This document shows positions 5,069 through 64,000 of a stretch of DNA of 64,000 nucleotides, piece after piece (position 1 is the stretch's first letter; every line of letters begins with the position of its first letter). This DNA comes from Macrostomum lignano (lineage: Eukaryota). The stretch lies in assembly GCA_002269645.1 (NCBI GenBank), contig NIVC01000897.1:186001-250000 (forward strand), in the 5' to 3' direction. The position numbers and the translations under genes are program-made. The notes under the pieces are model-generated. The model was given only the letters and a program-made list of their open reading frames with translations. It was not told the DNA's origin and did not search any database.

Positions 5069-6087
5069 TACAATAGTTTTGTATAGCTGGCTTGCTAAGC
5101 TAGGAGAGTTGGCATAGCCTATCACACCATGCCATCTTTTTGCACTTCCCTAGGCCTTTTAATATCATACTGTTTGTGTAAATAAATGTATGCGCAAAGT
5201 AGCACAAAATCTTTGCTGCCATTATATCTATTGAACTAAAAGGCCTTCTGCCTCAATAGTCAAATTGGCTAAGATATGAATTTTTATATAAAATCATTAA
5301 GAAATTTTTTATAAATATAAAATATATGTATTTTTTATAAACTTAAATATAATTTAGTCTTAAAAAATATATGTTTGATATGCAATTACTAAAAAAATAT
5401 TTTAATTAAGTTAAGAAAATCTCTTTTTTAAAACTTATTAAGCATTGGGGAGGTAATGCAAACAAAATCCACCATATTGAGCTAATGCACTAATGCACTG
5501 CAGGAAAAAACATTGCAGGCAAACCTTGGCAGAAAAAAACTTGGCAGGCAATTCCAGCCTAGGTAGACAAATCACCACAGACAATTTACTTATGGGCAAA
5601 ATGCACTATAGGCAAATCTTGGCAAGAAAAGCTTGGCAGGCAATTTGTCTATGGGCAATTCTCATAGAACCAGTATAGCTACTAGGCACTAGCAATATAT
5701 GCCCAACAATAGTTTAGAAAAAACAACTAGGGGGCCTAGAACTCTATGCTTATTTATTTTCTTATAAGTTATACTTCAACAATATTCATTTTAAAAAAAC
5801 TTAAATATATATAGGCTAGATGACTAGATCATTTCATTGGATTGAATACAATAATCAATATTAATATTATGATTATAAACATATTATATGTTTGAAATAA
5901 TTTAAATACATTTCCAAATATAAAATTAAAATGGTATATTTTACTCTACACTCTTTTCTAGACTGTGTAGGCCTATTAGGGATGGGGGTCTTAGATCAAA
6001 ATTGAAATACATATTAATTAAAATTATCTAAATGATATAAAAATTTTATAAAAAGGCCTAGCTTTATATTAATTAGGCCTAGTTTAA

Positions 6088-7251
6088 TAGAGGTCGGACG
6101 GGATCCTAATCCCGATCCCAAAATCTCAGGATCCCGAGGAAAATTAAATTCCTGCGGGACCAGACTCCCGACCCTAAAAAACTCGAGATTTGGGAACAGG
6201 TCTTTTGGCTCATTCCATATAAGATGGACATTTTTGGAAAATAGAAAAAAGTCAATATTTTTGCTTGCCATTGCCTTATCAGCCAATTTTTTTACCAAAT
6301 GTTTTTTATGTGTAATATCTACAATCTAAGAATAAATGAATGATAAAATGTTAGATTAGTATGCTATCAAGTGGCAAAAAGTCATTTTTGTAAAAAATTT
6401 AGACATTTTTCTAAGCAAAAGACATCATTAAGTTTGTGTACCTTTTAAAAACAAATAGAAAGCTTTGGAAGGTTGAAACAAACTATAGATAGAAGTATAG
6501 TACTTGCATCATCAGATAAAAGTATTGGTGACCAAATAATCTATTATATTTTTAATATATTGGTACCTCAAAGTTACTGAATTGACAGAAAAAAATATGT
6601 TACGACCATAATGTTACGACCATAAGGCTGCCTTTTCTTTTGTATCTTTGTTGCCTCTTTGAGTTTATATATTCTACAAAAAGAGTATGATTTCTAAAGA
6701 TGTTCTTAGTCAAATTTTAAAAAATGTATTGCAAAATATCAAAAATAAAAATGTTATAAGACTTTTACCTTTTAGTTTCTTTGTCAAAAATCCTGTTGTT
6801 ACGACCATAAGTGCCATTCAAGGTTTAATAGCATCTATACTAATGATGATATCTACATGAAACTCTATAAAAATATTTTTGACAAAATTATCTTTCATTT
6901 AAAATATTGGTTTAGTATATTCTATTATTATATTTCATTTTATAAGTAAAAATAGCCTGTCATGTTACGACCATGCTTATATGGAATGAGCCTTTTGATT
7001 AAAAATTTATAGAATTAGTGATTACTTGAAGGTATTTTGCTTTAACTTGTACTTGTTACATTATTTACTTTGTTGGTTATAAAACTTCATATCAATTTCG
7101 TTGTGTTTTACTTCTTAATCTTTACAATCTTTTCTCAATTTTGTTTAACTTTACATGGACAATACACTAAAAGACCTGATCCCGATTCCCGATCCCGAGA
7201 AAAAAATTATTCCCGATCCCGCCCAAAGATTTCAATCCCGTCCGACCTCTA
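6088..7251. mobile_element. Non-autonomous TIR element (MITE-like), outer element
   Basis: TAGAGGTCGGACGGGAT at 6088-6104 and its exact reverse complement at 7235-7251. The imperfect inversion extends inward to GGGAACAGGTCTTTT / AAAAGACCTGATCCC. A 12-bp direct repeat TAGGCCTAGTTT lies at 6074-6085 and 7252-7263. Confidence 0.8.
6207..6992. mobile_element. Non-autonomous TIR element nested inside the 6088-7251 element
   Basis: Perfect 17-bp TIR GGCTCATTCCATATAAG (6207-6223) / CTTATATGGAATGAGCC (6976-6992), TTTT on both flanks, internal GTTACGACCAT repeats. Confidence 0.8.
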
Positions 7252-10200
7252 TAGGCCTAGTTTTAGTTTAATTGCAATTTGAAAATCTGTTTTTTAAGTA
7301 AATGACCTATTGAATACTTTTTGATAATATTTAACCAATTATGCCATAGTAAGTAGAAATTTTGGCTTGAAATTGGATTATTGAATTGATTTCCTAAATT
7401 AATAATTTTTGTTTTAAGACAATACAATAATAATTGAGACCAAAGGCAAGGCTTCTATCAGTCTCAGTACAGTAGTCCAATTTTATAAGCTTGCTTTAGT
7501 CATTTAGCTAATGCAAATAAACTTAACTAGTGTCATTACTGTGCTCTTATTTTTATGTAGTGTAAGGACAGTAGGCCCTATAGGCCGAAGGACTATGCTT
7601 ATGCGGCAATGGGTTCTTTTTATTGAAGCATGTCGATTCTATTAATCTACGACTACGTTTTGCAAGATCTAAAAGGCTTGTTCACACCGCAATCAAAAAT
7701 AACCAAATTCAATGTCACGGTCACACCGTTTGTATACAAAATTTGATTTCTTTTTTACATTGATCGTGTAAATGGTCATTGGTTTGCTTATTCGAGACTT
7801 TTCGCATAATTAGCTCGAATTTCGTAGAAAGTTGTATTGAACGAAATTACCGGAAAATAAAAAATAGTTTTAATTTTTTGTAGCTTTTATCACCTTGCGT
7901 AAAAACTGTTTCATCCAATTTTTTTCGTTGAGTTTTACGTTTAAAAGATGACCATTGTTAGAATATCCTGATGCCTAATTCTCACTGGTAGACTCGGTAA
8001 AGCAAACAACATTATTATTTTATTTAGATAGCTAGCCTGCTTTCATCACAAGTGGTTAAAAACCTGTGCTCTTTTTTTCAATCTTGCTCTGAGGCTCGCA
8101 GTAGAGGTCTGTAGATGCAGTGAGAGGTATTTAAGGCAAAAAACTAGGTTTCGTGATTCATACTTTGTTATGCTGAGACAAAAAATGGTAAAAAGCAAAA
8201 GAAGGCCTATACACTCATAGATGGCACTCTTGATTCCTATAGAGAATGTGAAAAAATTCCATAATATTGTGACAGTGTAATTCATAGAATCATCTGATCT
8301 CGTATTTCCTTATCTCGCATTGCATGCATACCGTAGTACTTGTATTTTTTAATTTATTTTAACAATATTCTATACGCATTATTATTGCGCTAATGTTACA
8401 GTTAAATGCTTTGTTTTTGTAGCCTCGTATGTATTTACTCTATTATTTGTATTTCATTCATATCGTTATTATTTCTCGTAATTATGTAGATCTACCTATG
8501 TACATGTACTGGCGTATGTTATTCTTACCCGATATAATTTATCGATTAATTTGTACATGTACATTTCTCGCTGCGTGGGGGGTTTGTCTGGATTTTGGAT
8601 TAGGGATGTTGTTGTTTGTTATCTGTTTACCTTACCCCGGCCAATTAAATATACGCGCTTGCAGTCAGCCATGCACCGCTCTCTCCCTTCTCTCCTGGGT
8701 TTTCGCTCCGCTTCTCGCGGGCCCCTTAGCCGTCGCATTCAATTGCTTTAGTCGCACTAAAATTAAGCCGCTATTAATCCAAACCTAACCTTTAATTAAA
8801 CATACCAAATTTGATATCTGCAATTTACGCTAAGGGAAGTGGGCTGCTGGCTCTAGATTATTAAATTTAACCGCTACACAAGTCGTACGTCTTCCCTCCT
8901 TTATTCGTCACAATATATTATATTTTCATTAGCATATCCACATCGTTTATCACCTTTAATCATTAGATTTAGAAGGTTTAAGTATATCAAGCTTCACAGC
9001 TAGATATTGCTCACAAGACGAATTCAAAAAGCGAAAATAACTTCATGGACGTTTTCATCTTAATAAAACTGTGATAGCAGGCATTTAACGCGCTGCAATT
9101 TATTCATTGAAAGCTTACTAAACAACGTTTTTTGATTTGTTTTATTTAATGCTTTTTAAATTAAAATCTACGACAATTTGGCTTATTCAACAAAACGAGT
9201 ATGCAAAATAAGACAAAGTTCAGTGGTACAATACTCAGCATGTAATGTATATAAGTTTTGTTTCTATATCCAATTAGAACGAGTATAGACTCTTCTTTAA
9301 CGTGTATATTTTGTTTTTACTAAACACGTTTTCTTTGCTTAGCAATTTCTTTTTAAAAAACACTTTTACAATTTTTTGTGCAATTATCAGCTTACAGTAA
9401 CCTCACTGAAGTCCCTACAAATGGCTACAATAAGCTTCGGACCCATGAACCTTTTTAAGTTGTGCAAGTTTGTCAAAAATGTGCGTGCAAGTGTGCAATT
9501 TTTTTCAGCATGCACAGAATGTGCCCAAGATTTTATCTCGTATAAAAATTCCATCCTGGTAGGTTAATAATGATTGTAGTTAAGTGGTCTTTAACAGGCA
9601 CACATATGCTCACCCCCTGATTTACACTGGCCATTTGATTTACTTTTTGACCAAAAATGCAACCTAACTATAAAAGAAACCATTGACCATGCATCAATTT
9701 TTTTTAAATAGGCTAATATGAATAACTATGACTATCTTATTAAGGCTAAATGAATTGTTATCTAATTAGTATTCTGTCTATTCTCTTGGCCCTTTTTGGC
9801 AACTTAACCCTGGTCTACCACAATTTTGGCTAGTAGTTATATATGTATTAAGCATAAGTTGTTCAATTTGGGATCCTTAGATACCATTAACTTAGGCCTA
9901 ATATACATTGAAATTTGTTAATGCTTTCTTAGAGTAGCATAGTGTTGCTACCATTGTAATTTATGTTATGAAATATTAGATTCTTTGAGCTTGTTCAAAA
10001 TAGAGATTAATTGGTTATTTTATAGGCCTACCTAACAGGCAAATTACTTAAGATTGAGTAACTAGATTATTATTGATCCAATTATTATTAGCTTAAGACT
10101 CCTAATAAGAGTCTTATATAAAATTCAGTCAAGTGGCCATGTACAAGACTCCTACTCCTAGCAAAGCTTTAGTTAGGGCTAAAGTAATTTGAAAGTTGGT

Positions 10201-13200
10201 ATAGACGATAGTCTAAGTTGAATAAAAGGTTACTTGAATACTACTAAGCAGCCATAGTCTAGAAAATGGCCTTTATGACAAAAAATTCTAGCATATTTTT
10301 GCTTTTGCTAACAATTTTGGCATACACTTGGTATATAGAATATTCAGGCCATATTGTAGAAGCAGAGATATACGCTAGAATTTTCCGGCATATACTTGAG
10401 TTCTGTGAGGTACACCGGTATACATTTCTTAGCTATATACAGTGTGGCATAAAAGACTAGTGTACAAATTAATATAAATATTTTTTGTGCATTTTTCTGT
10501 GTTAAATTATTTCAAAAACTGTTCTTTCTGCTACTATTTTCTCATTTACTAATCATTTTAATTACTGGAATTGTCACGACAATTGTCATGTCATTATCAT
10601 TTTTTGTAATTCAATTTTTAATTTAAATATTCTTCAATTTTTTACTGTTTTTTAAGTTGGCGTACATTTAAAATTTGTTGGTGTACAATTGAAAATTTAA
10701 TGAAAATGTGTCTAGTGTACATAGAAAACCTTTGCAATATCAGTTTTTAGCAAATAAACAGTAGTTTGAAAGTTTAGAACTCCTTTATTTCTAATAATAC
10801 ATATTCTTTTAAAAAATGGTGTACAAACAACTCAGGACTCAATATAATTTTTTTAATTTTATGTTTGTAAAATAACCAAAACAAGAATTTTTTCTTCTGA
10901 CATATGCTTGCCATGATCTGGACTATGGTTAAATAGTCTAAACAAAAATAGGAAAACTAGAAAAAGTTTTAAAAGTAAAGAGAAAGTTAAAAGTTACAAC
11001 CAATACACAATTTTAAATAGGACACACATAAGCAGTTATCATTGCATGGGGCATGCCATGAGGCCATAGGTGGTTCAGCAAACAAAAATAATAATTGCAA
11101 AAAGCATGCAAAACTAAAGAAAACAAAAACCCAAGAGAAGTCTAGAAAAAGGCATGTATACCAGAAATTTCTAGGGTACATTTAAGAAATTTAGTGTACA
11201 TCTTATTATTCAAAAAGTGATTTTGGGTTTTGGTGAATATGTTTAATATTTTGGTATGTGACATGCACCAAAAAATACATTATCAATATAGATAATTGTG
11301 GTTTACAGTTTATGCTACTGGTTTATTATTCTAGTGGATTTCCTTGGATGTCCTTGATAGTCCCTAACCTTAGTATTGTTAATGTTAAAGGATTAAGTCA
11401 AGACACCAATGTAATATTAAGTTGTAATACAAGTTTAACAACTAAAAAAAAAATGTTTAATATACAAGTGGTTTGTTTTATATTTAATATTATGTTTCCC
11501 TTAAGTGCTTAGGCAAGACTCCCAGTTTTAGAGGCAAGACTCTTCTGTGCAAAACTATTTCCTATTTTTAGTTCCCTATCTTCCCCTTTTATCTTGAGTT
11601 CTTTGATAGAAATTTAGAAATTAAAAAACCACACATGGAAGACAATGCAATGCTTTTCTCTGAGATCTCAACTGCTTTATAATTATAAAGAAGCCCAAAA
11701 TTTGCAATCCACCCCACTATAATTACTTTCATTGGCCAAAACTATTGATAGTAATAAAAAAGCAAATATATCTTGTCTAAATTCTGCCTCTAAATTATGC
11801 CCTACTACAAATAATAGTCATAATATTTGTCTCTGCATTATCATTTATAATCATAAAATTTGATAACTATTTAATAACCCAAAACTGATTTCCATGTTTT
11901 TAACAAATTTAAATTTTAACAAAATGCACAAATTTTGTTTTTTCTTTTTATACTTGTGTATAAAATGTTATACAAGTATAATTATTTGCTATGCCAAAAC
12001 ATTTGCTGTACAATGTCATGTCCTTTGGCTGATCCACCACTTTGCTTATTATATAGTACATGGTATAGCCTGATAAAGTATAGTATATGGTACTTATAGA
12101 TGCTACGCTTCATATCATATTACCCTTAAAATATAGCATATTATCTTGTCCAAGAATGGCTTAATATAGGCATTTTTACCCAACAGAGGCAGTATGCACT
12201 TCAGCTTAGTATAGTGCTATAGGACCTTGTTGCTTTGCCCACCATACTTTTGCCAAGAGTGCATTGTTCCATAAAACAATTTGGCAATAGTCTCTATTAA
12301 AAGAAGTTTTCATATACACCCATTTGTAGTATAATTGGTTTATTAAAAATGTAACTATCATGAATAAATTAATAGCCAAATGACCTAATTAGATAGAAAC
12401 ATTTATTGTACCCTTTATATAATATAAACTATCTATTTGTATATATCTAGCCATCTAGGACTTTAGATTATAAAGAAAATAGGCACTTAAACCTACAGCC
12501 CTAAAAGTAGGGATCTCTGTTGTGCTATAACTATAGTCAGCTTGATTGTTATTAGACTCATTCCTGCTACATAGATAGGCAAGACATCTTTATGGTAATC
12601 TGGAAAAAACTTAGCCAACAACTTAATCCTTTTGATACCCTATTGAATGAAGTTAGGCATTAGGAAACATTAAGTTTACTATAAAAATAAGTATAAGCAT
12701 AGTGTAGATTTTGTACTTTGGTAGTCATTTGTATCAGCATAGTTGCTACATGCACAAGTTATTATATATTCTAAGTAGTTAAAAATTATTAAAATCAGAA
12801 TTGGTAAAATTAGTAAACCTAGGGAGCTCAATGTCTAAATATGCCATATTTTTCATACATAAGCACTATTGGGTTCAGTTAACCTTACCTGGAAGTGTGC
12901 CTGGTCTATGAAGCAGCCAAGGCAGAAATGATGATGTGGTATTATTGTCCTACTTGGGCCAGTAGGGGGTACTGATGGCTTGAAAAACTGGGTAGGAGGT
13001 TGGCCAACAGCAGGTCACTTTGTTGCCATTTGTGCTGTGATGTAAGTCTATGTAGCCACCTTGCCTTTAGGTAGTTCAAAAGAACCTGTTGCAGTAATGT
13101 TTACAATGTTAAGGGTACATGCAAAATATGAGGGGCATACAATGTATACTGCACAAATGCTAGCAAAATTTAATGATAAATATATAAATTGGACTCTGCT

Positions 13201-22425: not shown

Positions 22426-22507
22426 CGTCGCAAGCAGGATTCGAACCTGCGCGGGGAAACCCCATTGGATTTCTAGTCCAACGCCTTAACCACTCGGCCA
22501 TCGCGAC
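22426..22507 (-). tRNA. tRNA-Ser(AGA): tRNA-Ser, anticodon AGA, 82 nt
   Basis: Minus strand GTCGCGATGGCCGAGTGGTTAAGGCGTTGGACTAGAAATCCAATGGGGTTTCCCCGCGCAGGTTCGAATCCTGCTTGCGACG: 7-bp acceptor stem, TTGGA/TCCAA anticodon stem, long variable arm, A and B boxes, T7 terminator immediately downstream. Confidence 0.97.
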
Positions 22508-30853: not shown

Positions 30854-32433
30854 TCACAGTTTCAGTCCGACTCGCAGCCGAGCCGAACGGGCCCGAGGAT
30901 TCTCGGCCACTTCGGCCGGCCCGGCCATCAGGTAATCTTCGCCCCGATTCGAATCGAACCGCACCAGCTGCCAGAGCTGCGGCGGCGGCGGCGGCGGCTC
31001 GGCGTGCAGCGACTGCGGCGATCGTTGCCGCTTGAAAGCGTCGGCCCAGGCGGCCGGACAGCAGAGGTCGTCCAGCGACCGGTTGGCGAAGACGCGCTTG
31101 ACCAGGCGATCCTCAAGCGAGTGGAAGGACAGCACCAGGCAAGGCGCGCCGGGCTTGAGCAGCTGTCTGGCCAGCTGGAGCCCGCTGAGAAGCTCAATAA
31201 ATTCGTTGTTCACCGCGATCCGCAGCGCCTGCGATTGTGGTTTTTATTTTTCATATTTATATATTATGACAATAAACTCCATTTATACTACTGACACTAT
31301 TTAAATGATTTTTTAATGTCCCATGCGTATTGAAACTATTGAAAGCACCTAGAATAGTAATTTAGACGAAGATATATACTTGAACAAAATTTTACAAAAA
31401 TACATCTACACTGTTTATGAATATTTTTAAAACAAAATCTTTGCTTGCCGATATGTATCGAAGTACAGAAAACTCTGTCTAATTATTTAGACCGTCCTTT
31501 CAGACTGACATGTTGACAAAAAACATGTTCACCATACTAATCATTTTTAAACGGATCAACTAATAGCCGATATGTATCAGAAAAAAGCTTAGCAAAGGTA
31601 CAAAACATGAGGCTTGACTATCTGTTTCCTCTCACCTGAAACACTCGCGTCGCCGGGTGCGCACTGCGGCCCAAGCTGTCTTTCCGACGCGCGCTGCCCA
31701 CAGCGTCCGCCAGGCAATCGGCCAGCTGCTTCGTCGTGCGCAGAGGTCCGCGCGGCCCGCTGCGACGCTCAACCACGGCCCGGGCCAGCCGGCGCGCCAT
31801 TGGCTCTTCGCCGTAGGCGCGAAACAGAGCGGCGAGGTCGCCGGCCTCCAGCCCGTTGACGAGATCGGCGGCGGTTGGCGAGTCGGCCTCGGCCGGGCCG
31901 CCCATGCGCATGTCGAGCGGCCCGTCAGCTGACAGGGCGAAGCCGCGCCTCGCCTCATCCAGCTGTGTTGAGCACAGGCCCAGGTCAAACAGGGCGCCAT
32001 CGATGCCCTCAACGCCCGTCAGCTCGGCGTGCTCGGCCAGCTGGGAGAATTTCCCTAACAGCGGCACCACCGTGGCGGAGTCGGAGCCGGGCGGCAGAGA
32101 CTCGGACAGCTGTCCGGCAAGCCGGTAGGCGGCAGGATCGCGATCGTTGGCGTACACTGTGATCGGCGTCGACGCTTCGGACGCCGCTCTTAACAGTCGT
32201 CGGGTGTGACCGCCGGCGCCAAATGTGGCGTCGAGCAGCAGAATCCGGCTGCCGGGGCGGCGAGTTCCTTGGCAGGCGCCAACCAGCAGCTCGGCGACAG
32301 CGTCCGCCAGCACGGGCGAATGCGAGCCCGGCGCCGCCGAGGCAGCAGCCGCCGCCTGGGAGCTGAACTGCAGAACTCGAATACTAACAGGTCGCTGAGG
32401 AGAGAGTTTCAGTTTGGTTTTGATTAGGCCATT
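30854..32433 (-). CDS. METTL15: Mitochondrial 12S rRNA m4C methyltransferase (RsmH family); exons 32433-31636 and 31228-30854; no in-frame genomic ATG
   Basis: HSPVL, DATFGAGGHT, DRDP, DLGLCSTQLD..RGF...DGPLDMRM, HPATRVFQ|ALRIAVNNE, SFHSLEDRLVK, NPRARSARLR. Phase-0 intron CAG|GTGAGA ... ATCGCAG|GCG. N-terminal K/R/S-rich presequence-like stretch. Confidence 0.95.
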
Positions 32434-32469
32434 CTATACACAGGAGCGTTGTGGACAACCTGGCCCAAG

Positions 32470-32740
32470 GCTATGGGGCTATTCTATTTATTTCGCTGAC
32501 CCCTGAGCACACACAAGCGCTCCGATACTGTGCGCAGACACGCACTCATACACACAGCTCACACAGGGGATGTAAAGCAGCCCTTGTTGACTTTCTAATT
32601 GTCAAGAATGTACACTCTCTGTGCCTTAGGAGTTGGCCCTCATCCATGCACAAGCCCCAAATAAATGTGCCCGCGTACGGATTCGAACCCGGGGCGGTAA
32701 TGTGAGCTTCAGACGCGTTTACCGCTGAGCTGCTATGTCC
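32470..32740 (-). mobile_element. Second tRNA-derived SINE-like element just upstream of the METTL15 acceptor
   Basis: Minus strand AGCAGCTCAGCGGTAAA (A-box-like) and GGGTTCGAATCC (B-box); no valid cloverleaf; 3' boundary uncertain. Confidence 0.55.
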
Positions 32741-33011
32741 AGAGAGTAAATGGATAAGAGGAGACTCAGAATTACGTCTGACTGAGGAGGAAACCAGTCC
32801 AACTGTCCAAGCATCATCCCGAGAGCTACTCCAGCGCTTGGCATAGGTGTCATCCTCCATGGAGTCCCGGTCGGCGGCCAGGCCACAAAGGGGTCAAGCC
32901 ATTGCCGAAAGCTGATCGGAGGTAGCTATGGCTGCTTTGTGGATGACGCAAGCCCGATTTATCAGATAGCTGCATACTAACCGCGGTCAACTCTGCTTAA
33001 CTTGCAATGCT

Positions 33012-52664: not shown

Positions 52665-55600
52665 ATGAACTTCAATGCCAGTAGGCGCGGCGCGGCCATC
52701 GGCGGCGGCGATTCTGTGCCGGCATTTGACGACACTCGCGATCGGCCGCTGTTTTCTCGGCACAGCTCGCAACCCGTCATGTCCTGGCAGTCTGGCTGTG
52801 AGTCGCGTTTTTGTCTCTTGTTGGTTTTAGTGGTCCTTGGCCAATTTAATTATAGTAGTTTTTGTGATATTCTGTCATTGTAATTGTGACCAATGTGACC
52901 AATTCGATGCAGTGGTCCTTGACCTTGTCCTATTAACTTAGTGGTCCTCGGCCCTGTCAAGTCAGTGGTCCACGGCCATTGAGATTTATTGGTCTTTGGT
53001 CTTGTCAAACCAGTGGTCCTCGCCAAATGTGATTTAGTAGTCCTTGTTCCTATCAATTAGTAGTCCTATGCTTCTGTCAAATCAGTGGTATTGGCCATTA
53101 TTTAGACATTTTTTAAGTCTTAGATCACTTAGAGCTTTTATTTTAGCCAGTCCATATGACTATTGCATTGCAGCTATGTACCAGCCGTCGTCTCAGGTCA
53201 TACCTTCGGTGCAACAGAGCCTAGGCTTTAGTCAACGCCTAGAGCAAACCGGTGGTTACCAAGGACGCTCGTCAGTAGTCCGGAATTCGAATCCCGCGGG
53301 ATTTAATCAATGGGTAAATCGAGACGGCTATCAGGGCCGCGTAGCAGTCGCTTGGGCTGGCGACAGCTTCAGTCAGAGACCTCCGCCCGATGGTAACCAA
53401 GGACGCCAAGCCGGCCAATATATGGGGGGATTTAGTCAAGGCTCCTCCAGCCAAATGCCATTCGCAGCTCCTACTGGTGAGGCCTTCAGCCAGAGGGTAA
53501 CTAAGACCGGCGGTCGTCAAGGGCAACTAAACTCTAGAGGTGGAAGTCAGGCTTCTAGCCAGAGACCAACTCAGCGGGCCAGTTGTCAAGGACAACAGCG
53601 GGCCAGCGCTGGCCAGGCATTCAGCCAGCAGTCCTCGGAGCAGATCGGCAGCGGCAGTCAAGGACAACAGCGGGCCAGCGCTAGCCAGGCATTCAGCCAG
53701 CGGTCCTCGGAGCCTCAGGCATGGAGCCTGAAGCGATCGATGAGCCAGCAGGACCAATCAGCCAGCAAGCGAGGCCGCACCGGGCACAGTCAGGCTACAA
53801 CACTATCAAGCAATTCAATTGGGCGCACAGGCACTCCAGCCAGTGGAGCAATGAGCACCGGGCACAGTCAGCAACAGTTCAGGCCAGGGCTGGCTACTCA
53901 AACTGATTGGACGCGTTACTGCAGTCAGCCGTCGGTGCCAGCTGCCAGCCTGCTGCAGCTTGGCGAGGCAACAGTGCAGGATCTGTGGGACTTTATGAAC
54001 GGCCGGTTTCAGGCTATGGAAGCGCAGCAGGCGCATAGCCTGGCTGCTATCACCGCCAAACTCGACCAGTGTGAGTTTTCGCACCCTATTTATACTACTT
54101 AGTCATAATTATTAAGTAGTTAACAAGCGTTATTTTATAAAAATCGTATTGAAAATTAATTGCGCATAAATTTTTTTGCATATATTGCAATCTGAATAAA
54201 TATAAGTTCTCTCGCTCTCTCTAGATCTGTCAAACAGATTAGGATATTTGAATTTTTTTATCAATTTCAGTGCTCAACCACATGGCGGCCATGAGTTTTA
54301 GCGCGGCGGCCAATTCTACTCAGCAAAGTACTGTGTTTGAACTCTGCAACGGTGAGCGCTAGGACCGTGGCTAGGGGGTGGGGGTGGCTGCGAGCTTTTT
54401 TTATTGCCGATTCTGGCCTGCGCGTGAAATATTGGCTTCGATTTTTTGTTGCTATACATTTACCTCGGCAAGAAGTTGCTATAGTGTGGTTGCTCTTTGA
54501 GGCCGGCCTAACCGCGTCGCCATATATCATCATCATAGTTTACTTCTCTGGCTTATGATCCTGCAATCTGCATTTTAATCTACTTCTGTATTTCTCACAT
54601 CTATAACTAAAATAGTACTTTATTTAGTGAGTGAATAATGTAAATTAGCTGTATCATAATGAATATTAATTGTCTTCGACATTGACTACCAGATATCTTC
54701 TTTTATTAGCGTTGCTAAACTTATCCAATTATAAAATTATCTACCGCCAGGTCACATCCCGCCCTATCCATCCTCCACCCCCTGTCACATCCCGCTCTAT
54801 CCATCCTCCACCCCCTGTCACATCCCGCCCCTATCCATCCTCCACCCCCTGTCACATCCCGCCCCTATCCATCCTCCACCCCCTGTCACATCCCGCTCTA
54901 TCCATCCTCCACCCCCTGTCACATCCCGCCCCTATCCATCCTCCACCCCCTGTCACTTCCCGCCCCTATCCATCCTCCACCCCCTGTCACATCCCGCTCT
55001 ATCCATCCTCCACCCCCTGTCACATCCCGCTCTATCCATCCTCCACCCCCTGTCACATCCCGCCCCTATCCATCCTCCACCCCCTGTCACATCCCACCCT
55101 ATCCATCCTCCACCCCCTGTCACATCCCGCCCCTATCCATCCTCCACCCCCTGTCACATCCCGCTCTATCCATCCTCCACCCCCTGTCACATCCCGCTCT
55201 ATCCATACTCCACCCCCTGTCACATCCCGCCCCTATCCATCCTCCACCCCCTGTCACATCCCGCCCCTATCCATCCTCCACCCCCTGTCACATCCCGCTC
55301 TATCCATCCTCCACCCCCTGTCACATCCCGCCCCTATCCATCCTCCACCCCCTGTCACATCCCGCCCCTATCCATCCTCCACCCCCTGTCACATCCCGCC
55401 CCTATCCATCCTCCACCCCCTGTCACATCCCGCCCCTATCCATCCTCCACCCCCTGTCACATCCCGCCCCTATCCATCCTTCACCCCCTGTCACATCCCG
55501 CCCCTATCCATCCTTCACCCCCTGTCACATCCCGCCCCTATCCATCCTCCACCCCCTGTCACATCCCGCCCCTATCCATCCTCCACCCCCTGTCACATCC

Positions 55601-56241
55601 CGCCCCTATCCATCCTTCACCCCCTGTCACATCCCGCCCCTATCCATCCTTCACCCCCTGTCACATCCCGCCCCTATCCATCCTCCGCCCCCTGTCACAT
55701 CCCGCCTTTATCCACCTTCCGCCCCCTGTCACACCCCGCCTTTATCCACCTTCCGCCCCCTGTCACACCCCGCCTTTATCCACCTTCCGCCCCCTGTCAC
55801 ACCCCGCCTTTATCCACCTTCCGCCCCCTGTCACACCCCGCCTTTATCCACCTTCCGCCCCCTGTCACACCCCGCCTTTATCCACCTTCCGCCCCCTGTC
55901 ACACCCCGCCTTTATCCACCTTCCGCCCCCTGTCACACCCCGCCTCTATCCATCATCCGTCCTCTTGCGTTCCGCCTGCCTGCCTGGGTCACCCTCTATA
56001 CGGGACCCAAGCTGTGTTTTACAAAATGATCGGCAATTTATTAAGCACAAAGCTGCCAATTTTGTTTTGCACAGAGCCAATGCATTGCCTTTGTCCCGCA
56101 GACACCAATGCTAGCAGTCAGCCAGCGCCTGTCTGCGCACAACCGCAACCTCCGCTGGCGGATTTAACGCCAACCCCGAAGCGTAAATCGAATTTGCGGC
56201 TGCGTCGTAAAACTCCAACTATACGAGATGCTCTATCCGAG
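52665..56241 (+). CDS. Unrecognised protein with Q/S/G-rich FSQ-repeat domain and short coiled coil; exons 52665-52797, 53174-54070, 54271-54351, 56102 (or 56075)-56241; 3' end not resolved
   Basis: All three junctions are canonical GT-AG with consistent phase 1 (GGCT|GTGAGT..TTGCAG|CT ATG; CAGT|GTGAGT..TTTCAG|TG; AACG|GTGAGC..CGCAG|AC). Exon 2 is a ~300-codon open frame that is not a DNA tandem repeat. Confidence 0.7.
54750..55955. repeat. 33-34-bp C-rich minisatellite (CCTGTCACATCCCGCCCCTATCCATCCTCCACC) in intron 3 of the orphan gene; variant switch at ~55700
   Basis: Direct inspection. Confidence 0.97.
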
Positions 56242-59984: not shown

Positions 59985-62900
59985 CAAGCCCCTGTGGAAT
60001 CGCCCCTCCAACAACCCTGTAGAATCGCCCCTCCAACAACCCTGTAGAATCGCCCCTCCAACAACCCTGTAGAATCGCCCCTCCAACAACCCTGTGGAAT
60101 CGCCCCTCCAACAACCCTGTAGAATCGCCCCTCCAACAACCCTGTAGAATCGCCCCTCCAACAACCCTGTAGAATCGCCCCTCCAACAACCCTGTGGAAT
60201 CGCCCCTCCAACAACCCTGTAGAATCGCCCCTAGACCCTGTTAGACCCTGTGTAATCGCCCCTCCAACAACCCTGTGGAATCACCCCTCCAACAACCCTG
60301 TAGAATCGCCCCTCCAACAACCCTGTGGAATCACCCCTCCAACAACCCTGTAGAATCGCCCCTCCAACAACCCTGTAGAATCGCCCCTCCAACAACCCTG
60401 TGGAATCACCCCTCCAACAACCCTGTAGAATCGCCCCTCAAACAACCCTGTGGAATCACCCCTCCAACAACCCTGTAGAATCGCCCCTCCAAGCCCCTGT
60501 GGAATCGCCCCTCCAACAACCCTGTGGAATCGCCCCTCCAACAACCCTGTGGAATCACCCCTCCAACAACCCTGTAGAATCGCCCTTCAAGACCCTGTGG
60601 AATCGCCCCTCCAACACCCGTAGAATCGCCCTTCAAGCCCCTGTGGAATCGCCCCTCCAACACCCCGTAAAATCGCTCTTCAAGACCCTGTGGAATCGCC
60701 CCTCCAACACCCCGTAGAATCGCCCCTCCAACACCCTGTAGAATCGCCCCTCCAACACCCCGTAGAATCGCCCTTCAAGCCCCTGTGGAATCGCCCCTCC
60801 AACAACCCTGTAGAATCGCTCCTCCAACAACCCTGTATCGCCCCTCCAACAACCCTGTAGAATCGCCTCTCCAACAACCCTGTGGAATCGCCCCTCCAAC
60901 AACCCTGTAGAATCGCCCCTCAAACACCCCGTAGAATCGCCCTTCAAGACCCTGTGGAATCGCCCCTCCAACACCCCGTAGAATCGCCCTTCAAGCCCCT
61001 GTGGAATCGCCCCTCCAACACCCCGTAAAATCGCTCTTCAAGACCCTGTGGAATCGCCCCTCCAACACCCCGTAGAATCGCCCCTCCAACACCCTGTAGA
61101 ATCGCCCCTCCAACACCCCGTAGAATCGCCCTTCAAGCCACTGTGGAATCGCCCCCAACACCCCTGTAGAATCGCCCCTCCAACACCCCGTAGAATCGCC
61201 CTTCAAGACCCTGTGGAATCGCCCCTCCAACACCCCGTAGAATCGCCCTTCAAGCCCCTGTGGAATCGCCCCTCCAACACCCCGTAAAATCGCCCTTCAC
61301 GACCCTGTGTAATCGCCCCTCCAACACCCCTGTAGAATCGCCCCTCAAACACCCTGTGGAATCGCCCCTCCAACACCCCGTAGAATCGCCCTTCAAGCCC
61401 CTGTGGAATCGCCCCTCCAACACCCCGTAAAATCGCCCTTCACGACCCTGTGTAATCGCCCCTCCAACACCCCTGTAGAATCGCCCCTCAAACACCCTGT
61501 GGAATCGCCCCTCCAACACCCCGTAGAATCGCCCTTCAAGACCCTGTGTAATCGCCCCTCCAACAACCCTGTGGAATCGCCCCTCAAACACCCTGTAGAA
61601 TCGCCCCTCCAACAACCCTGTAGAATCGCCCCTCCAACAACCCTGTAGAATCGCCCCTCCAACAACCCTGTAGAATCGCCCCTCAAACACCCTGTGGAAT
61701 CGCCCCTCCAACACCCCGTAGAATCGCCCTTCAAGACCCTGTGTAATCGCCCCTCCAACACCCCTGTAGAATCGCCCCTCAAACACCCTGTGGAATCGCC
61801 CCTCCAACACCCCGTAGAATCGCCCTTCAAGACCCTGTGTAATCGCCCCTCCAACAACCCTGTGGAATCGCCCCTCAAACACCCTGTAGAATCGCCCCTC
61901 CAACAACCCTGTAGAATCGCCCCTCCAACAACCCTGTAGAATCGCCCCTCCAACAACCCTGTGGAATCGCCCCTCAAACACCCTGTAGAATCGCCCCTCC
62001 AAAACCCTATAGAATCGCTTTTCCAAAACCCTGTAGAATCGCCCCTCCAACACCCCTGTAGAATCGCCCCTCCAACAACCCTGTGGAATCGCCCCTCAAA
62101 CACCCTGTAGAATCGCCCCTCCAACAACCCTGTAGAATCGCCCCTCCAACACCCCTGTAGAATCGCCCCTCAAACACCCTGTGGAATCGCCCCTCCAACA
62201 CCCCGTAGAATCGCCCTTCAAGACCCTGTGTAATCGCCCCTCCAACAACCCTGTGGAATCGCCCCTCAAACACCCTGTAGAATCGCCCCTCCAACAACCC
62301 TGTAGAATCGCCCCTCCAACAACCCTGTAGAATCGCCCCTCCAACACCCTGTAGAATCGCCCCTCCAAAACCCTATAGAATCGCTTTTCCAAAACCCTGT
62401 AGAATCGCCCCTCCAACACCCCTGTAGAATCGCCCCTCCAACACCCCGTAGAATCGCCCTTCAAGACCCTGTGTAATCGCCCCTCCAACAACCCTGTGGA
62501 ATCGCCCCTCAAACACCCTGTAGAATCGCCCCTCCAACAACCCTGTAGAATCGCCCCTCCAACAACCCTGTAGAATCGCCCCTCCAACAACCCTGTAGAA
62601 TCGCCCCTCAAACACCCTGTGGAATCGCCCCTCCAACACCCCGTAGAATCGCCCTTCAAGACCCTGTGTAATCGCCCCTCCAACACCCCTGTAGAATCGC
62701 CCCTCAAACACCCTGTGGAATCGCCCCTCCAACACCCCGTAGAATCGCCCTTCAAGACCCTGTGTAATCGCCCCTCCAACAACCCTGTGGAATCGCCCCT
62801 CAAACACCCTGTAGAATCGCCCCTCCAACAACCCTGTAGAATCGCCCCTCCAACAACCCTGTAGAATCGCCCCTCCAACAACCCTGTAGAATCGCCCCTC

Positions 62901-64000
62901 CAACAACCCTGTGGAATCGCCCCTCAAACACCCTGTAGAATCGCCCCTCCAAAACCCTATAGAATCGCTTTTCCAAAACCCTGTAGAATCGCCCCTCCAA
63001 CACCCCTGTAGAATCGCCCCTCCAACAACCCTGTGGAATCGCCCCTCAAACACCCTGTAGAATCGCCCCTCCAACAACCCTGTAGAATCGCCCCTCCAAC
63101 AACCCTGTGGAATCGCCCCTCAAACACCCTGTAGAATCGCCCCTCCAACAACCCTGTAGAATCGCCCCTCCAACAACCCTGTAGAATCGCCCCTCCAACA
63201 ACCCTGTAGAATCGCCCCTCAAACACCCTGTGGAATCGCCCCTCCAACACCCCGTAGAATCGCCCTTCAAGACCCTGTGTAATCGCCCCTCCAACACCCC
63301 TGTAGAATCGCCCCTCAAACACCCTGTGGAATCGCCCCTCCAACACCCCGTAGAATCGCCCTTCAAGACCCTGTGTAATCGCCCCTCCAACAACCCTGTG
63401 GAATCGCCCCTCAAACACCCTGTAGAATCGCCCCTCCAACAACCCTGTAGAATCGCCCCTCCAACAACCCTGTAGAATCGCCCCTCCAACAACCCTGTGG
63501 AATCGCCCCTCAAACACCCTGTAGAATCGCCCCTCCAACAACCCTGTAGAATCGCCCCTCCAACAACCCTGTAGAATCGCCCCTCCAACAACCCTGTGGA
63601 ATCGCCCCTCAAACACCCTGTAGAATCGCCCCTCCAAAACCCTATAGAATCGCTTTTCCAAAACCCTGTAGAATCGCCCCTCCAACACCCCTGTAGAATC
63701 GCCCCTCCAACAACCCTGTGGAATCGCCCCTCAAACACCCTGTAGAATCGCCCCTCCAACAACCCTGTAGAATCGCCCTTCAAACACCCTGTAGAATCGC
63801 CCCTCCAACAACCCTGTAGAATCGCCCCTCCAACAACCCTGTAGAATCGCCCCTCCAACAACCCTGTGGAATCGCCCCTCAAACACCCTGTAGAATCGCC
63901 CCTCCAAAACCCTATAGAATCGCTTTTCCAAAACCCTGTAGAATCGCCCCTCCAACACCCCTGTAGAATCGCCCCTCCAACACCCTGTAGAATCGCCCCC
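59985..64000. repeat. ~24-25-bp satellite (CCCTGTAGAATCGCCCCTCCAACAA) with higher-order structure; runs off the right edge
   Basis: Near-identical 81-aa spurious ORFs at 61403, 61694, 62619 and 63230 mark repeated multi-unit blocks. Confidence 0.98.

What the first reader, a model, noticed from the sequence alone, without database searches (positions are those of the whole stretch)
32313..32440. METTL15 has no start codon of its own but is in frame with an acceptor AG: the spliced leader may donate the AUG
Seen: on the minus strand the METTL15 frame is open from 32433 (AAT GGC CTA ATC AAA ACC AAA CTG... = NGLIKTKLKLSPQRPVSIRVLQFSSQAAAA...HSPVL). It has no in-frame ATG before the conserved core and is preceded directly by ...CCTGTGTATAG|, whose TAG is an in-frame stop. 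The only nearby ATG (32432) gives ATG GCC TAA. Established: flatworm SLs end in AUG, and that AUG can initiate translation in schistosomes. Inference: trans-splicing at this AG yields M-NGLIKTKL..., so the mitochondrial presequence and the protein itself would depend on trans-splicing. Alternative: one C is missing from ATG GCC (C)TA, giving MALIKTKL...
Basis: partly seen in the sequence, partly recalled or inferred. Interest (0 to 1): 0.75.

Follow-up and report, generated by a model that had tools for sequence, protein, structure and literature searches.

The report
Start codon borrowed from spliced leader

Summary
The window is Macrostomum lignano (contig NIVC01000897.1). The METTL15/RsmH frame is open from 32433 on the minus strand and is bounded by TAG. 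It has no in-frame ATG before the catalytic core, and the only nearby ATG reads ATG GCC TAA.

The general idea that the spliced leader (SL) donates the AUG is well supported:
- The published M. lignano SL ends in ...TTGCATG.
- No genomic ATG can give a protein that keeps the SAM-binding motif.
- GenBank models of all three genomic copies are 5'-partial.

The proposed acceptor is wrong. Two paralogous copies carry the identical TATAGAATGGCCTAATC, which rules out the missing-C assembly error. They also lack 2 bp at (CT)3, 32406-32401.

The acceptor that works in every copy is CTCTCTCCTCAG| at 32396-32395, with the first exon base at 32394. It gives M-RPVSIRVLQFSS... The GenBank and UniProt models begin exactly there, or 3 nt later in one case. 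Every coding indel downstream of it is a multiple of 3.

No SL-containing read for this gene could be examined. This is an ordinary new example of a known mechanism (Cheng et al. 2006).

The parts
32434..32436 (-). In-frame TAG stop bounding the open frame.
   Evidence: The context is GTATAG, with no CAG. It is out of frame with the core in paralogs L001 and L003.
32424..32432 (-). Three-codon mini-ORF ATG GCC TAA in the outron. Trans-splicing would remove it.
   Evidence: It is identical in all three genomic copies, so it is not an assembly error.
32401..32406 (-). (CT)3 tract that is (CT)2 in paralogs L001 and L003.
   Evidence: Alignment. Frames computed: MNGLIKTKLKLSSATC* in L001 and L003.
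32395..32406 (-). Polypyrimidine tract plus CAG (CTCTCTCCTCAG). This is the most likely SL trans-splice acceptor, with AG at 32396-32395.
   Evidence: GenBank models PAA59314 and PAA58944 begin at the first base after this CAG. PAA75191, the window copy, begins 3 nt later. UniProt models also start RPVSIRV. It is in frame in all copies. It matches 5 of 6 positions of the published YTNCAG motif.
31636..32394 (-). Exon 1 (759 nt). It begins CGA CCT GTT (R P V) and ends ...GTG TTT CAG|gtgagagg. It encodes the presequence and most of the methyltransferase domain.
   Evidence: With the SL AUG it gives M-RPVSIRVLQFSSQAAAAASAAPGSHSPVL....
31229..31635 (-). Intron (407 nt, GTGAG...CAG, 30% GC).
   Evidence: The spliced product restores the conserved motif HPATRVFQ|ALRIAVNNE.
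30854..31228 (-). Exon 2, coding part, ending in TGA at 30856-30854.
   Evidence: The total CDS is 1134 nt, 377 genomic codons plus the SL Met.
32368..32369 (-). Alternative in-frame acceptor AG (TTCTGCAG|TTC). It matches YTNCAG perfectly and would give M-FSSQAAAA..., with no basic residue in the presequence.
   Evidence: No annotation supports it.
32356..32357 (-). Alternative in-frame acceptor AG (CTCCCAG|GCG). It would give M-AAAAASAAPGSH...
   Evidence: No annotation supports it.

Best explanation
The gene is one of three Macrostomum lignano copies of METTL15, the mitochondrial 12S rRNA m4C methyltransferase and RsmH homologue. Its pre-mRNA carries an outron that ends in CTCTCTCCTCAG (AG at 32396-32395).

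Proposed mechanism:
- The 35-nt spliced leader (...CAATTTATTGCATG) is trans-spliced onto 32394.
- The mature mRNA therefore reads ...UUGCAUG|CGACCUGUU...
- The SL's terminal AUG is the only AUG ahead of the catalytic domain and serves as the initiator.
- The product is a 378-residue protein, M-RPVSIRVLQFSSQAAAAASAAPGS-HSPVL..., whose short N-terminus is basic, free of acidic residues and rich in Ser/Ala, and is the presumed mitochondrial presequence.

Shown here: no genomic start codon, the frame relationships in all copies, where coding constraint begins, the annotated 5' ends, and that the SL ends in ATG.

Inferred: that SL reads really join at 32394 for this gene, that the ribosome starts at the SL AUG, and that the protein goes to mitochondria.
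For: 1. Organism and gene: 97-100% identity to M. lignano BOX15_Mlig033630g1, Mlig020506g1 and Mlig020506g2. Next-best hits are animal METTL15 at 40-47%. Pfam PF01795 E=1.7e-68. Catalytic and SAM motifs are conserved.
2. No usable genomic ATG: the first in-frame ATG is codon 162, after the SAM motif.
3. The M. lignano SL is CGGTCTCTTACTGCGAAGACTCAATTTATTGCATG, and the trans-acceptor motif is YTNCAG (PMC8629364; PMC5173321). In Macrostomum the terminal ATG is regarded as a translation start (PMC10468722). [quoted passage not shown] 2006, as cited in PMC9851317, and PMC12582326).
4. ATG+CGA at 32394 is in frame in all three genomic copies.
5. Indel pattern between copies: 9, 3 and 9 nt inside the CDS defined from 32394, against 1, 2, 4 and 37 nt outside it. 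The 2-nt indel lies just 5' of the acceptor, inside its pyrimidine tract.
6. Three GenBank models and two UniProt models are 5'-partial. They begin with R or P of RPVSIRV, at the first base after the CAG or 3 nt later. That annotation cut transcript 5' ends at peaks of SL-containing reads (TBONE; PMC5730564).
7. Both neighbouring genes have ordinary genomic ATGs, so the partial status is specific to this gene.
8. None of the 3 GTRAG donors in the 1515-nt intergenic region has an in-phase upstream ATG.
Against: - No SL-containing read, EST or cDNA for this gene could be inspected. The link between the annotated 5' end and SL reads rests on the published pipeline description, not on data for this locus.
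- The GenBank model of the window copy itself starts 3 nt after the acceptor, not exactly at it.
- CCTCAG departs from YTNCAG at position -5 (C for T). The downstream in-frame CTGCAG| (first exon base 32367) matches the motif perfectly.
- The frameshift argument rests on a single evolutionary event shared by two near-identical copies (0.5-0.8% apart).
- The SL AUG context (UUGC AUG C) is a weak Kozak context. This is my own knowledge, not a test.
- Orthologues in parasitic flatworms have their own genomic Met.
Confidence: 0.72

Rival explanations
1. One reading: SL trans-splicing at the AG of TATAG (32435-32434) gives M-NGLIKTKLKLSPQRPVSIRV..., a 39-residue presequence.
For: It is in frame and open in the window copy. 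The extra residues add three Lys and look presequence-like. The pyrimidine content upstream of the AG is moderate at 0.69.
Against: In paralogs L001 and L003 the same site gives a 16-codon dead end because of the 2-bp deletion. The site has no CAG, being GTATAG against YTNCAG. All five database models start at or 3 nt after 32394. The AG is merely part of the bounding stop codon.
Confidence: 0.06
2. The SL still donates the AUG, but the main acceptor is one of the downstream in-frame AGs: CTGCAG| (first exon base 32367) or CCCAG| (32355). These would give shorter N-termini, M-FSSQ... or M-AAAAAS...
For: Both are in frame in all copies. CTGCAG matches YTNCAG perfectly. GC content rises to coding level (0.71) only from about 32367.
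Against: No annotated model starts there. The resulting N-termini have no basic residue before the core, which is poor for a mitochondrial presequence. Four of seven AGs being in frame is not significant (binomial p about 0.17, my calculation).
Confidence: 0.1
3. A cis-spliced upstream exon that carries the ATG exists and was missed by the annotations.
For: The CAG at 32395 would serve equally well as a cis acceptor. Sharing of acceptors between cis- and trans-splicing is reported in parasitic flatworms (PMC12582326). Fifteen plain GT sites upstream have an in-phase ATG.
Against: Two independent RNA-based annotations stop at the acceptor in all copies. None of the 3 GTRAG donors in the 1515-nt intergenic region has an in-phase upstream ATG. 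The upstream gene ends at about 33910 with AATAAA at about 33656.
Confidence: 0.07
4. Assembly error: one C is missing, ATG GCC (C)TA, so the gene would have its own ATG at 32432 (MALIKTKL...).
For: None beyond the near-miss itself.
Against: ATGGCCTAATC is identical in three separately assembled contigs. In L001 and L003 the repaired frame would still hit TAG after 16 codons.
Confidence: 0.01
5. Non-AUG initiation (for example CTG or ATT in exon 1) on a transcript that is not trans-spliced.
For: Near-cognate codons exist in frame, such as ATT at codon 5 and CTG at codon 8.
Against: It is unnecessary given an SL that ends in AUG. The outron ATG GCC TAA mini-ORF would precede such a start. The annotated 5' ends coincide with a splice acceptor.
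Confidence: 0.03

Closest known systems
SL-donated initiator methionine in Schistosoma mansoni (Cheng, Cohen, Ndegwa & Davis 2006, J Biol Chem 281:733; later called 'slORFs', PMC9851317)
   Same: The flatworm SL ends in AUG. The recipient mRNA has no AUG of its own ahead of a conserved ORF. The SL AUG is in frame directly at the acceptor.
   Different: This is a different flatworm order (Macrostomorpha, free-living). Use of the SL AUG in M. lignano has only been remarked on (PMC10468722), not tested. No read-level or translation evidence for this gene was available here.
Human and animal METTL15 and bacterial RsmH (MraW, PF01795)
   Same: Full-length domain match and conserved SAM and catalytic motifs. 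An N-terminal extension of 25 residues precedes the conserved H-x-P-V motif, as in other animal METTL15 proteins.
   Different: Orthologues, including those of parasitic flatworms, encode their own initiator Met. The M. lignano copies do not.
[quoted passage not shown] 2017; Ustyantsev & Berezikov 2021)
   Same: The gene 5' end lies at a pyrimidine-rich ...CAG acceptor. The gene is evolutionarily conserved, the class reported as enriched among trans-spliced genes. It is about 1.5 kb downstream of a same-strand gene.
   Different: Most trans-spliced genes keep a genomic ATG, as both neighbours do. Here the ORF is open to the very first exon base and depends on the SL.

Membership tests
SL-donated start codon (flatworm SL 3'-AUG initiator) | The species' spliced leader ends in AUG immediately before its GU donor | tested here: met
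   Literature only. The SL is ...CAATTTATTGCATG followed by GTAAG (PMC8629364; PMC5173321). No SL RNA gene lies in the window.
SL-donated start codon (flatworm SL 3'-AUG initiator) | The mRNA is SL trans-spliced at a defined acceptor, shown by SL-containing reads or cDNA | not testable with these tools
   The evidence is indirect. Five database models begin at or 3 nt after CTCAG|, and the annotation pipeline used SL-read peaks to set 5' ends. No reads were accessible. Gene IDs were not found in the papers or supplements held.
SL-donated start codon (flatworm SL 3'-AUG initiator) | The SL AUG is in frame with the conserved ORF at that acceptor | tested here: met
Met at 32394 in all three genomic copies.
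SL-donated start codon (flatworm SL 3'-AUG initiator) | No genomic in-frame AUG could yield a functional protein | tested here: met
   The first in-frame ATG is codon 162, after the SAM-binding motif. The first ATG in any frame is 395 nt into the mRNA.
SL-donated start codon (flatworm SL 3'-AUG initiator) | Translation actually initiates at the SL AUG | not testable with these tools
   This needs initiation-site ribosome profiling, a reporter assay or N-terminal proteomics.
METTL15 / RsmH (PF01795 MraW methylase) | Full-length match to the family profile above the curated cut-off | tested here: met
   231.8 bits against a cut-off of 27, profile positions 3-305 of 309.
METTL15 / RsmH (PF01795 MraW methylase) | Conserved SAM-binding and catalytic motifs, and closest to animal METTL15 | tested here: met
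   D56, TFGAGG 58-63, DRD 85-87, LDMRM, YGEE, HxAT..FQALRI.VN.E and FHSLED are invariant across 9 sequences. The best non-self hits are animal METTL15.
METTL15 / RsmH (PF01795 MraW methylase) | Mitochondrial localisation and m4C methylation of 12S rRNA | not tested
   Only a composition check was made: the 25-residue N-terminus has 2 Arg, no acidic residue and 12 Ser/Thr/Ala.

The most novel reading that the evidence does not exclude
All three M. lignano METTL15 copies have lost any genomic start codon, so the enzyme depends obligately on SL trans-splicing for its initiator AUG. Production of a mitoribosome-maturation enzyme would then be hard-wired to the trans-splicing machinery. A more speculative extension concerns the three nested in-frame acceptors that work in every copy (first exon bases 32394, 32367, 32355). 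They could give isoforms with and without a basic presequence, and hence dual localisation.
Probability: 0.7. Interest if true: 0.3.

Novelty: new member of a known kind. Interest (0 to 1): 0.2.

Why it matters
If confirmed, this is a clean, conserved-gene example in a free-living, transgenesis-capable flatworm of a protein that cannot be made without the SL's AUG. That would give a convenient reporter for asking whether, and how efficiently, the SL AUG initiates in Macrostomum.

It is also a practical annotation point. The many '5'-partial' M. lignano proteins in GenBank and UniProt that begin right after a CAG may in fact be complete once the SL Met is added.

It does not change the understanding of trans-splicing. 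The mechanism was shown in schistosomes in 2006, and its likely use in Macrostomum has been noted in print.

Tried and rejected
- A second protein search with only the 117 N-terminal residues was meant to fish out short RNA-derived fragments carrying the SL Met. It returned no hit at all, not even the known self-match. I treat this as a limit of the tool's word index, not as evidence.
- The full-length search showed no Logan or RNA-derived protein above 47% identity other than the GenBank cluster. I therefore did not spend the third search.
- The gene IDs Mlig033630 and Mlig020506, and 'METTL15', were not found in the paper texts or held supplements.
- The SL sequence is not in the window at up to 3 mismatches.
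- A tRNA-like stretch upstream (about 32680-32750) was checked as a possible SINE or Pol III element. ARAGORN and Rfam at E<=1 found nothing, and there is no second copy in the window. I dropped it.
- Assembly error: rejected through the paralog comparison.
- Operon with the upstream gene: about 1.5 kb CDS-to-acceptor and about 1.2 kb after the AATAAA. That is above the published 1-kb repeat-adjusted threshold, but I cannot apply the repeat adjustment. Left open.
- Scans of the viral, metagenome and prokaryote contig collections for the SL-exon junction were not run, because those collections cannot contain flatworm transcripts.

Full report
**What is there.** The minus strand at 32440-32381 reads tgtatag aat ggc cta atc aaa acc aaa ctg aaa ctc tct cct cag cga cct gtt agt at.
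- The frame is closed by TAG at 32436-32434 and open from 32433. It translates NGLIKTKLKLSPQRPVSIRVLQFSSQAAAAASAAPGSHSPVL....
- The ATG at 32432 reads ATG GCC TAA.

**Gene model.** The gene has two exons.
- Exon 1 ends ...GTG TTT CAG|gtgagagg at 31636.
- A 407-nt AT-rich intron occupies 31635-31229.
- Exon 2 runs 31228-30854 and ends in TGA.
- The product matches Pfam PF01795 (MraW/RsmH methylase) over the whole profile, E=1.7e-68.
- It keeps every invariant motif in an alignment with animal METTL15 and a bacterial RsmH.

**Organism and copies.** The protein is 97-100% identical to three Macrostomum lignano GenBank proteins: PAA75191, PAA59314 and PAA58944, all labelled 'partial'. Two UniProt entries also match. 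The next hits are animal METTL15 at 40-47% identity.
- Locus L002 (NIVC01000897.1) is identical to the window.
- L001 (NIVC01002278.1) and L003 (NIVC01002315.1) are paralogous or homeologous copies. Their CDS differs from the window's by 1.3-1.5%.

**The lack of a start codon is real.** Downstream of the TAG there is no in-frame ATG until codon 162, at window 31911. That lies after the DATFGAGGH SAM-binding motif. The first ATG in any frame is 395 nt into the mRNA. The same holds in all three copies. Both neighbouring genes, a Yippee/Mis18-like gene upstream and a RING gene downstream, have ordinary genomic ATGs.

**It is not an assembly error.** The stretch TATAGAATGGCCTAATCAAAACCAAACTGAAA is identical in the three independently assembled contigs.

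**Where the mRNA starts.** The decisive comparison is between copies.
- L001 and L003 have (CT)2 where the window has (CT)3, at 32406-32401.
- Twelve bases of pyrimidine tract, CTCTCTCCTCAG, end at 32395.
- An SL ending in ATG joined to 32394 gives ATG CGA CCT GTT... = M-RPVSIRVLQFSS... This is in frame and open in all three copies.
- PAA59314 and PAA58944 begin at the first base after that CAG.
- PAA75191, the window copy, begins 3 nt later.
- Both UniProt models begin RPVSIRV.
- Indels between copies are 9, 3 and 9 nt inside the CDS counted from 32394, and 1, 2, 4 and 37 nt outside it. Coding constraint therefore starts at or after 32394, not at 32433.
- Codon differences between the window and L001 are 9 synonymous and 8 non-synonymous. 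This is consistent with mild purifying selection, though the counts are small.

**What the literature adds.**
- The M. lignano SL is CGGTCTCTTACTGCGAAGACTCAATTTATTGCATG, followed by a GTAAG donor. The enriched trans-acceptor motif is [T/C]TNCAG, and about 30% of genes are trans-spliced (PMC8629364; SL also in PMC5173321).
- The Mlig_3_7 annotation trimmed the SL from reads, mapped them, and cut transcript 5' ends at those peaks with TBONE. ORFs were then called with TransDecoder (PMC5730564). An ORF open to the first base of a trans-spliced transcript would naturally be deposited as 5'-partial.
- Wiberg et al. state that the Macrostomum SL probably includes the final ATG as a translation start (PMC10468722).
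- In Schistosoma mansoni the SL AUG is in frame with 28% of trans-spliced transcripts, and more than 40 cDNAs need it to initiate in the correct frame (Cheng et al. 2006, as summarised in PMC9851317, and PMC12582326).

**Chance considerations.**
The AG belongs to the bounding TAG.
- Thirteen stop-free codons are expected about half the time.
- Seven AGs lie between the TAG and the conserved core, and four are in frame in the window (first exon bases 32433, 32394, 32367, 32355). The binomial p is about 0.17, so this is not remarkable.
- By motif alone, CTGCAG| (32367) is the best YTNCAG match, CCTCAG| (32394) misses at -5, and GTATAG| (32433) lacks the CAG.
- Only 32394 has annotation support.
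- Of the sites that are in frame in every copy, only 32394 gives an N-terminus with basic residues: 2 Arg, no acidic residue and 12 Ser/Thr/Ala in 26 residues. That composition is expected for a mitochondrial presequence.
- Its 25-residue N-terminal extension is within the range seen in the nine aligned sequences, from 4 residues in the bacterial RsmH to more than 60 in a bird METTL15.

**Alternatives.**
- A missed cis-spliced ATG exon cannot be excluded without reads. However, none of the 3 GTRAG donors in the 1515-nt intergenic region has an in-phase upstream ATG. Two annotation generations also stop at the acceptor.
- Non-AUG initiation is unnecessary given the SL.
- The upstream gene ends at about 33910, with an AATAAA at about 33656. 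Whether METTL15 has its own promoter or is the downstream gene of a polycistron is open.

**Verdict.**
- It is wrong in place. The acceptor is at 32396-32395, not 32435-32434, and NGLIKTKLKLSPQ is outron, not protein.
- The missing link is read-level evidence for this gene.
- The mechanism is established in flatworms and anticipated for Macrostomum, so this is a new example of a known kind and of low to moderate interest.

Noticed in passing
window 32680-32750 (minus strand): A tRNA-like stretch (AGCTCAGCGGTAAA ... GGGTTCGAATCC) lies about 290 nt upstream of the METTL15 acceptor. ARAGORN did not call it, Rfam gave no match at E<=1, and there is no second copy in the window. It may be a decayed tRNA or SINE relic.
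   Followed up: partly
window 32516-32552 and 32401-32406 (minus strand): A 37-nt segment is present in the window copy but absent from paralogs L001 and L003. A (CT)3 versus (CT)2 slip lies just upstream of the acceptor. The upstream kilobase shows five gaps in all, of 37, 2, 4, 37 and 2 nt.
   Followed up: partly
L002:1057, L001:1305, L003:1443 (upstream Yippee/Mis18-like gene; in the window its CDS ends at about 33910): In two copies the genomic ATG sits directly after an AAACAG. An SL AUG spliced there would be in frame, giving M-MADQ.... In L003 the GenBank model is instead 5'-partial and starts 1 nt after a TTCTTCAG further upstream. This suggests alternative or mis-assigned trans-splice sites.
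   Followed up: no
L002:10405 (downstream RING/zf-RING_UBOX gene): The genomic ATG lies 7 nt after a CTGCAG. If that is the trans-splice site, the SL AUG would be out of frame with the main ORF.
   Followed up: no
window 22426-22507 (minus strand): ARAGORN called a tRNA-Ser (anticodon AGA).
   Followed up: no
window 6001-12000, 54001-56000, 60001-64000: Composition is very patchy. There are 28-34% GC blocks at 6-12 kb, and strongly negative GC skew (-0.51 to -0.57) at 54-56 kb and 60-64 kb. These are probably repeats or strand-biased low-complexity sequence.
   Followed up: no
tool behaviour: A 117-residue N-terminal query returned no hit at all, although a 97%-identical database protein exists. 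Short or low-complexity queries can be lost by the word index.
   Followed up: no
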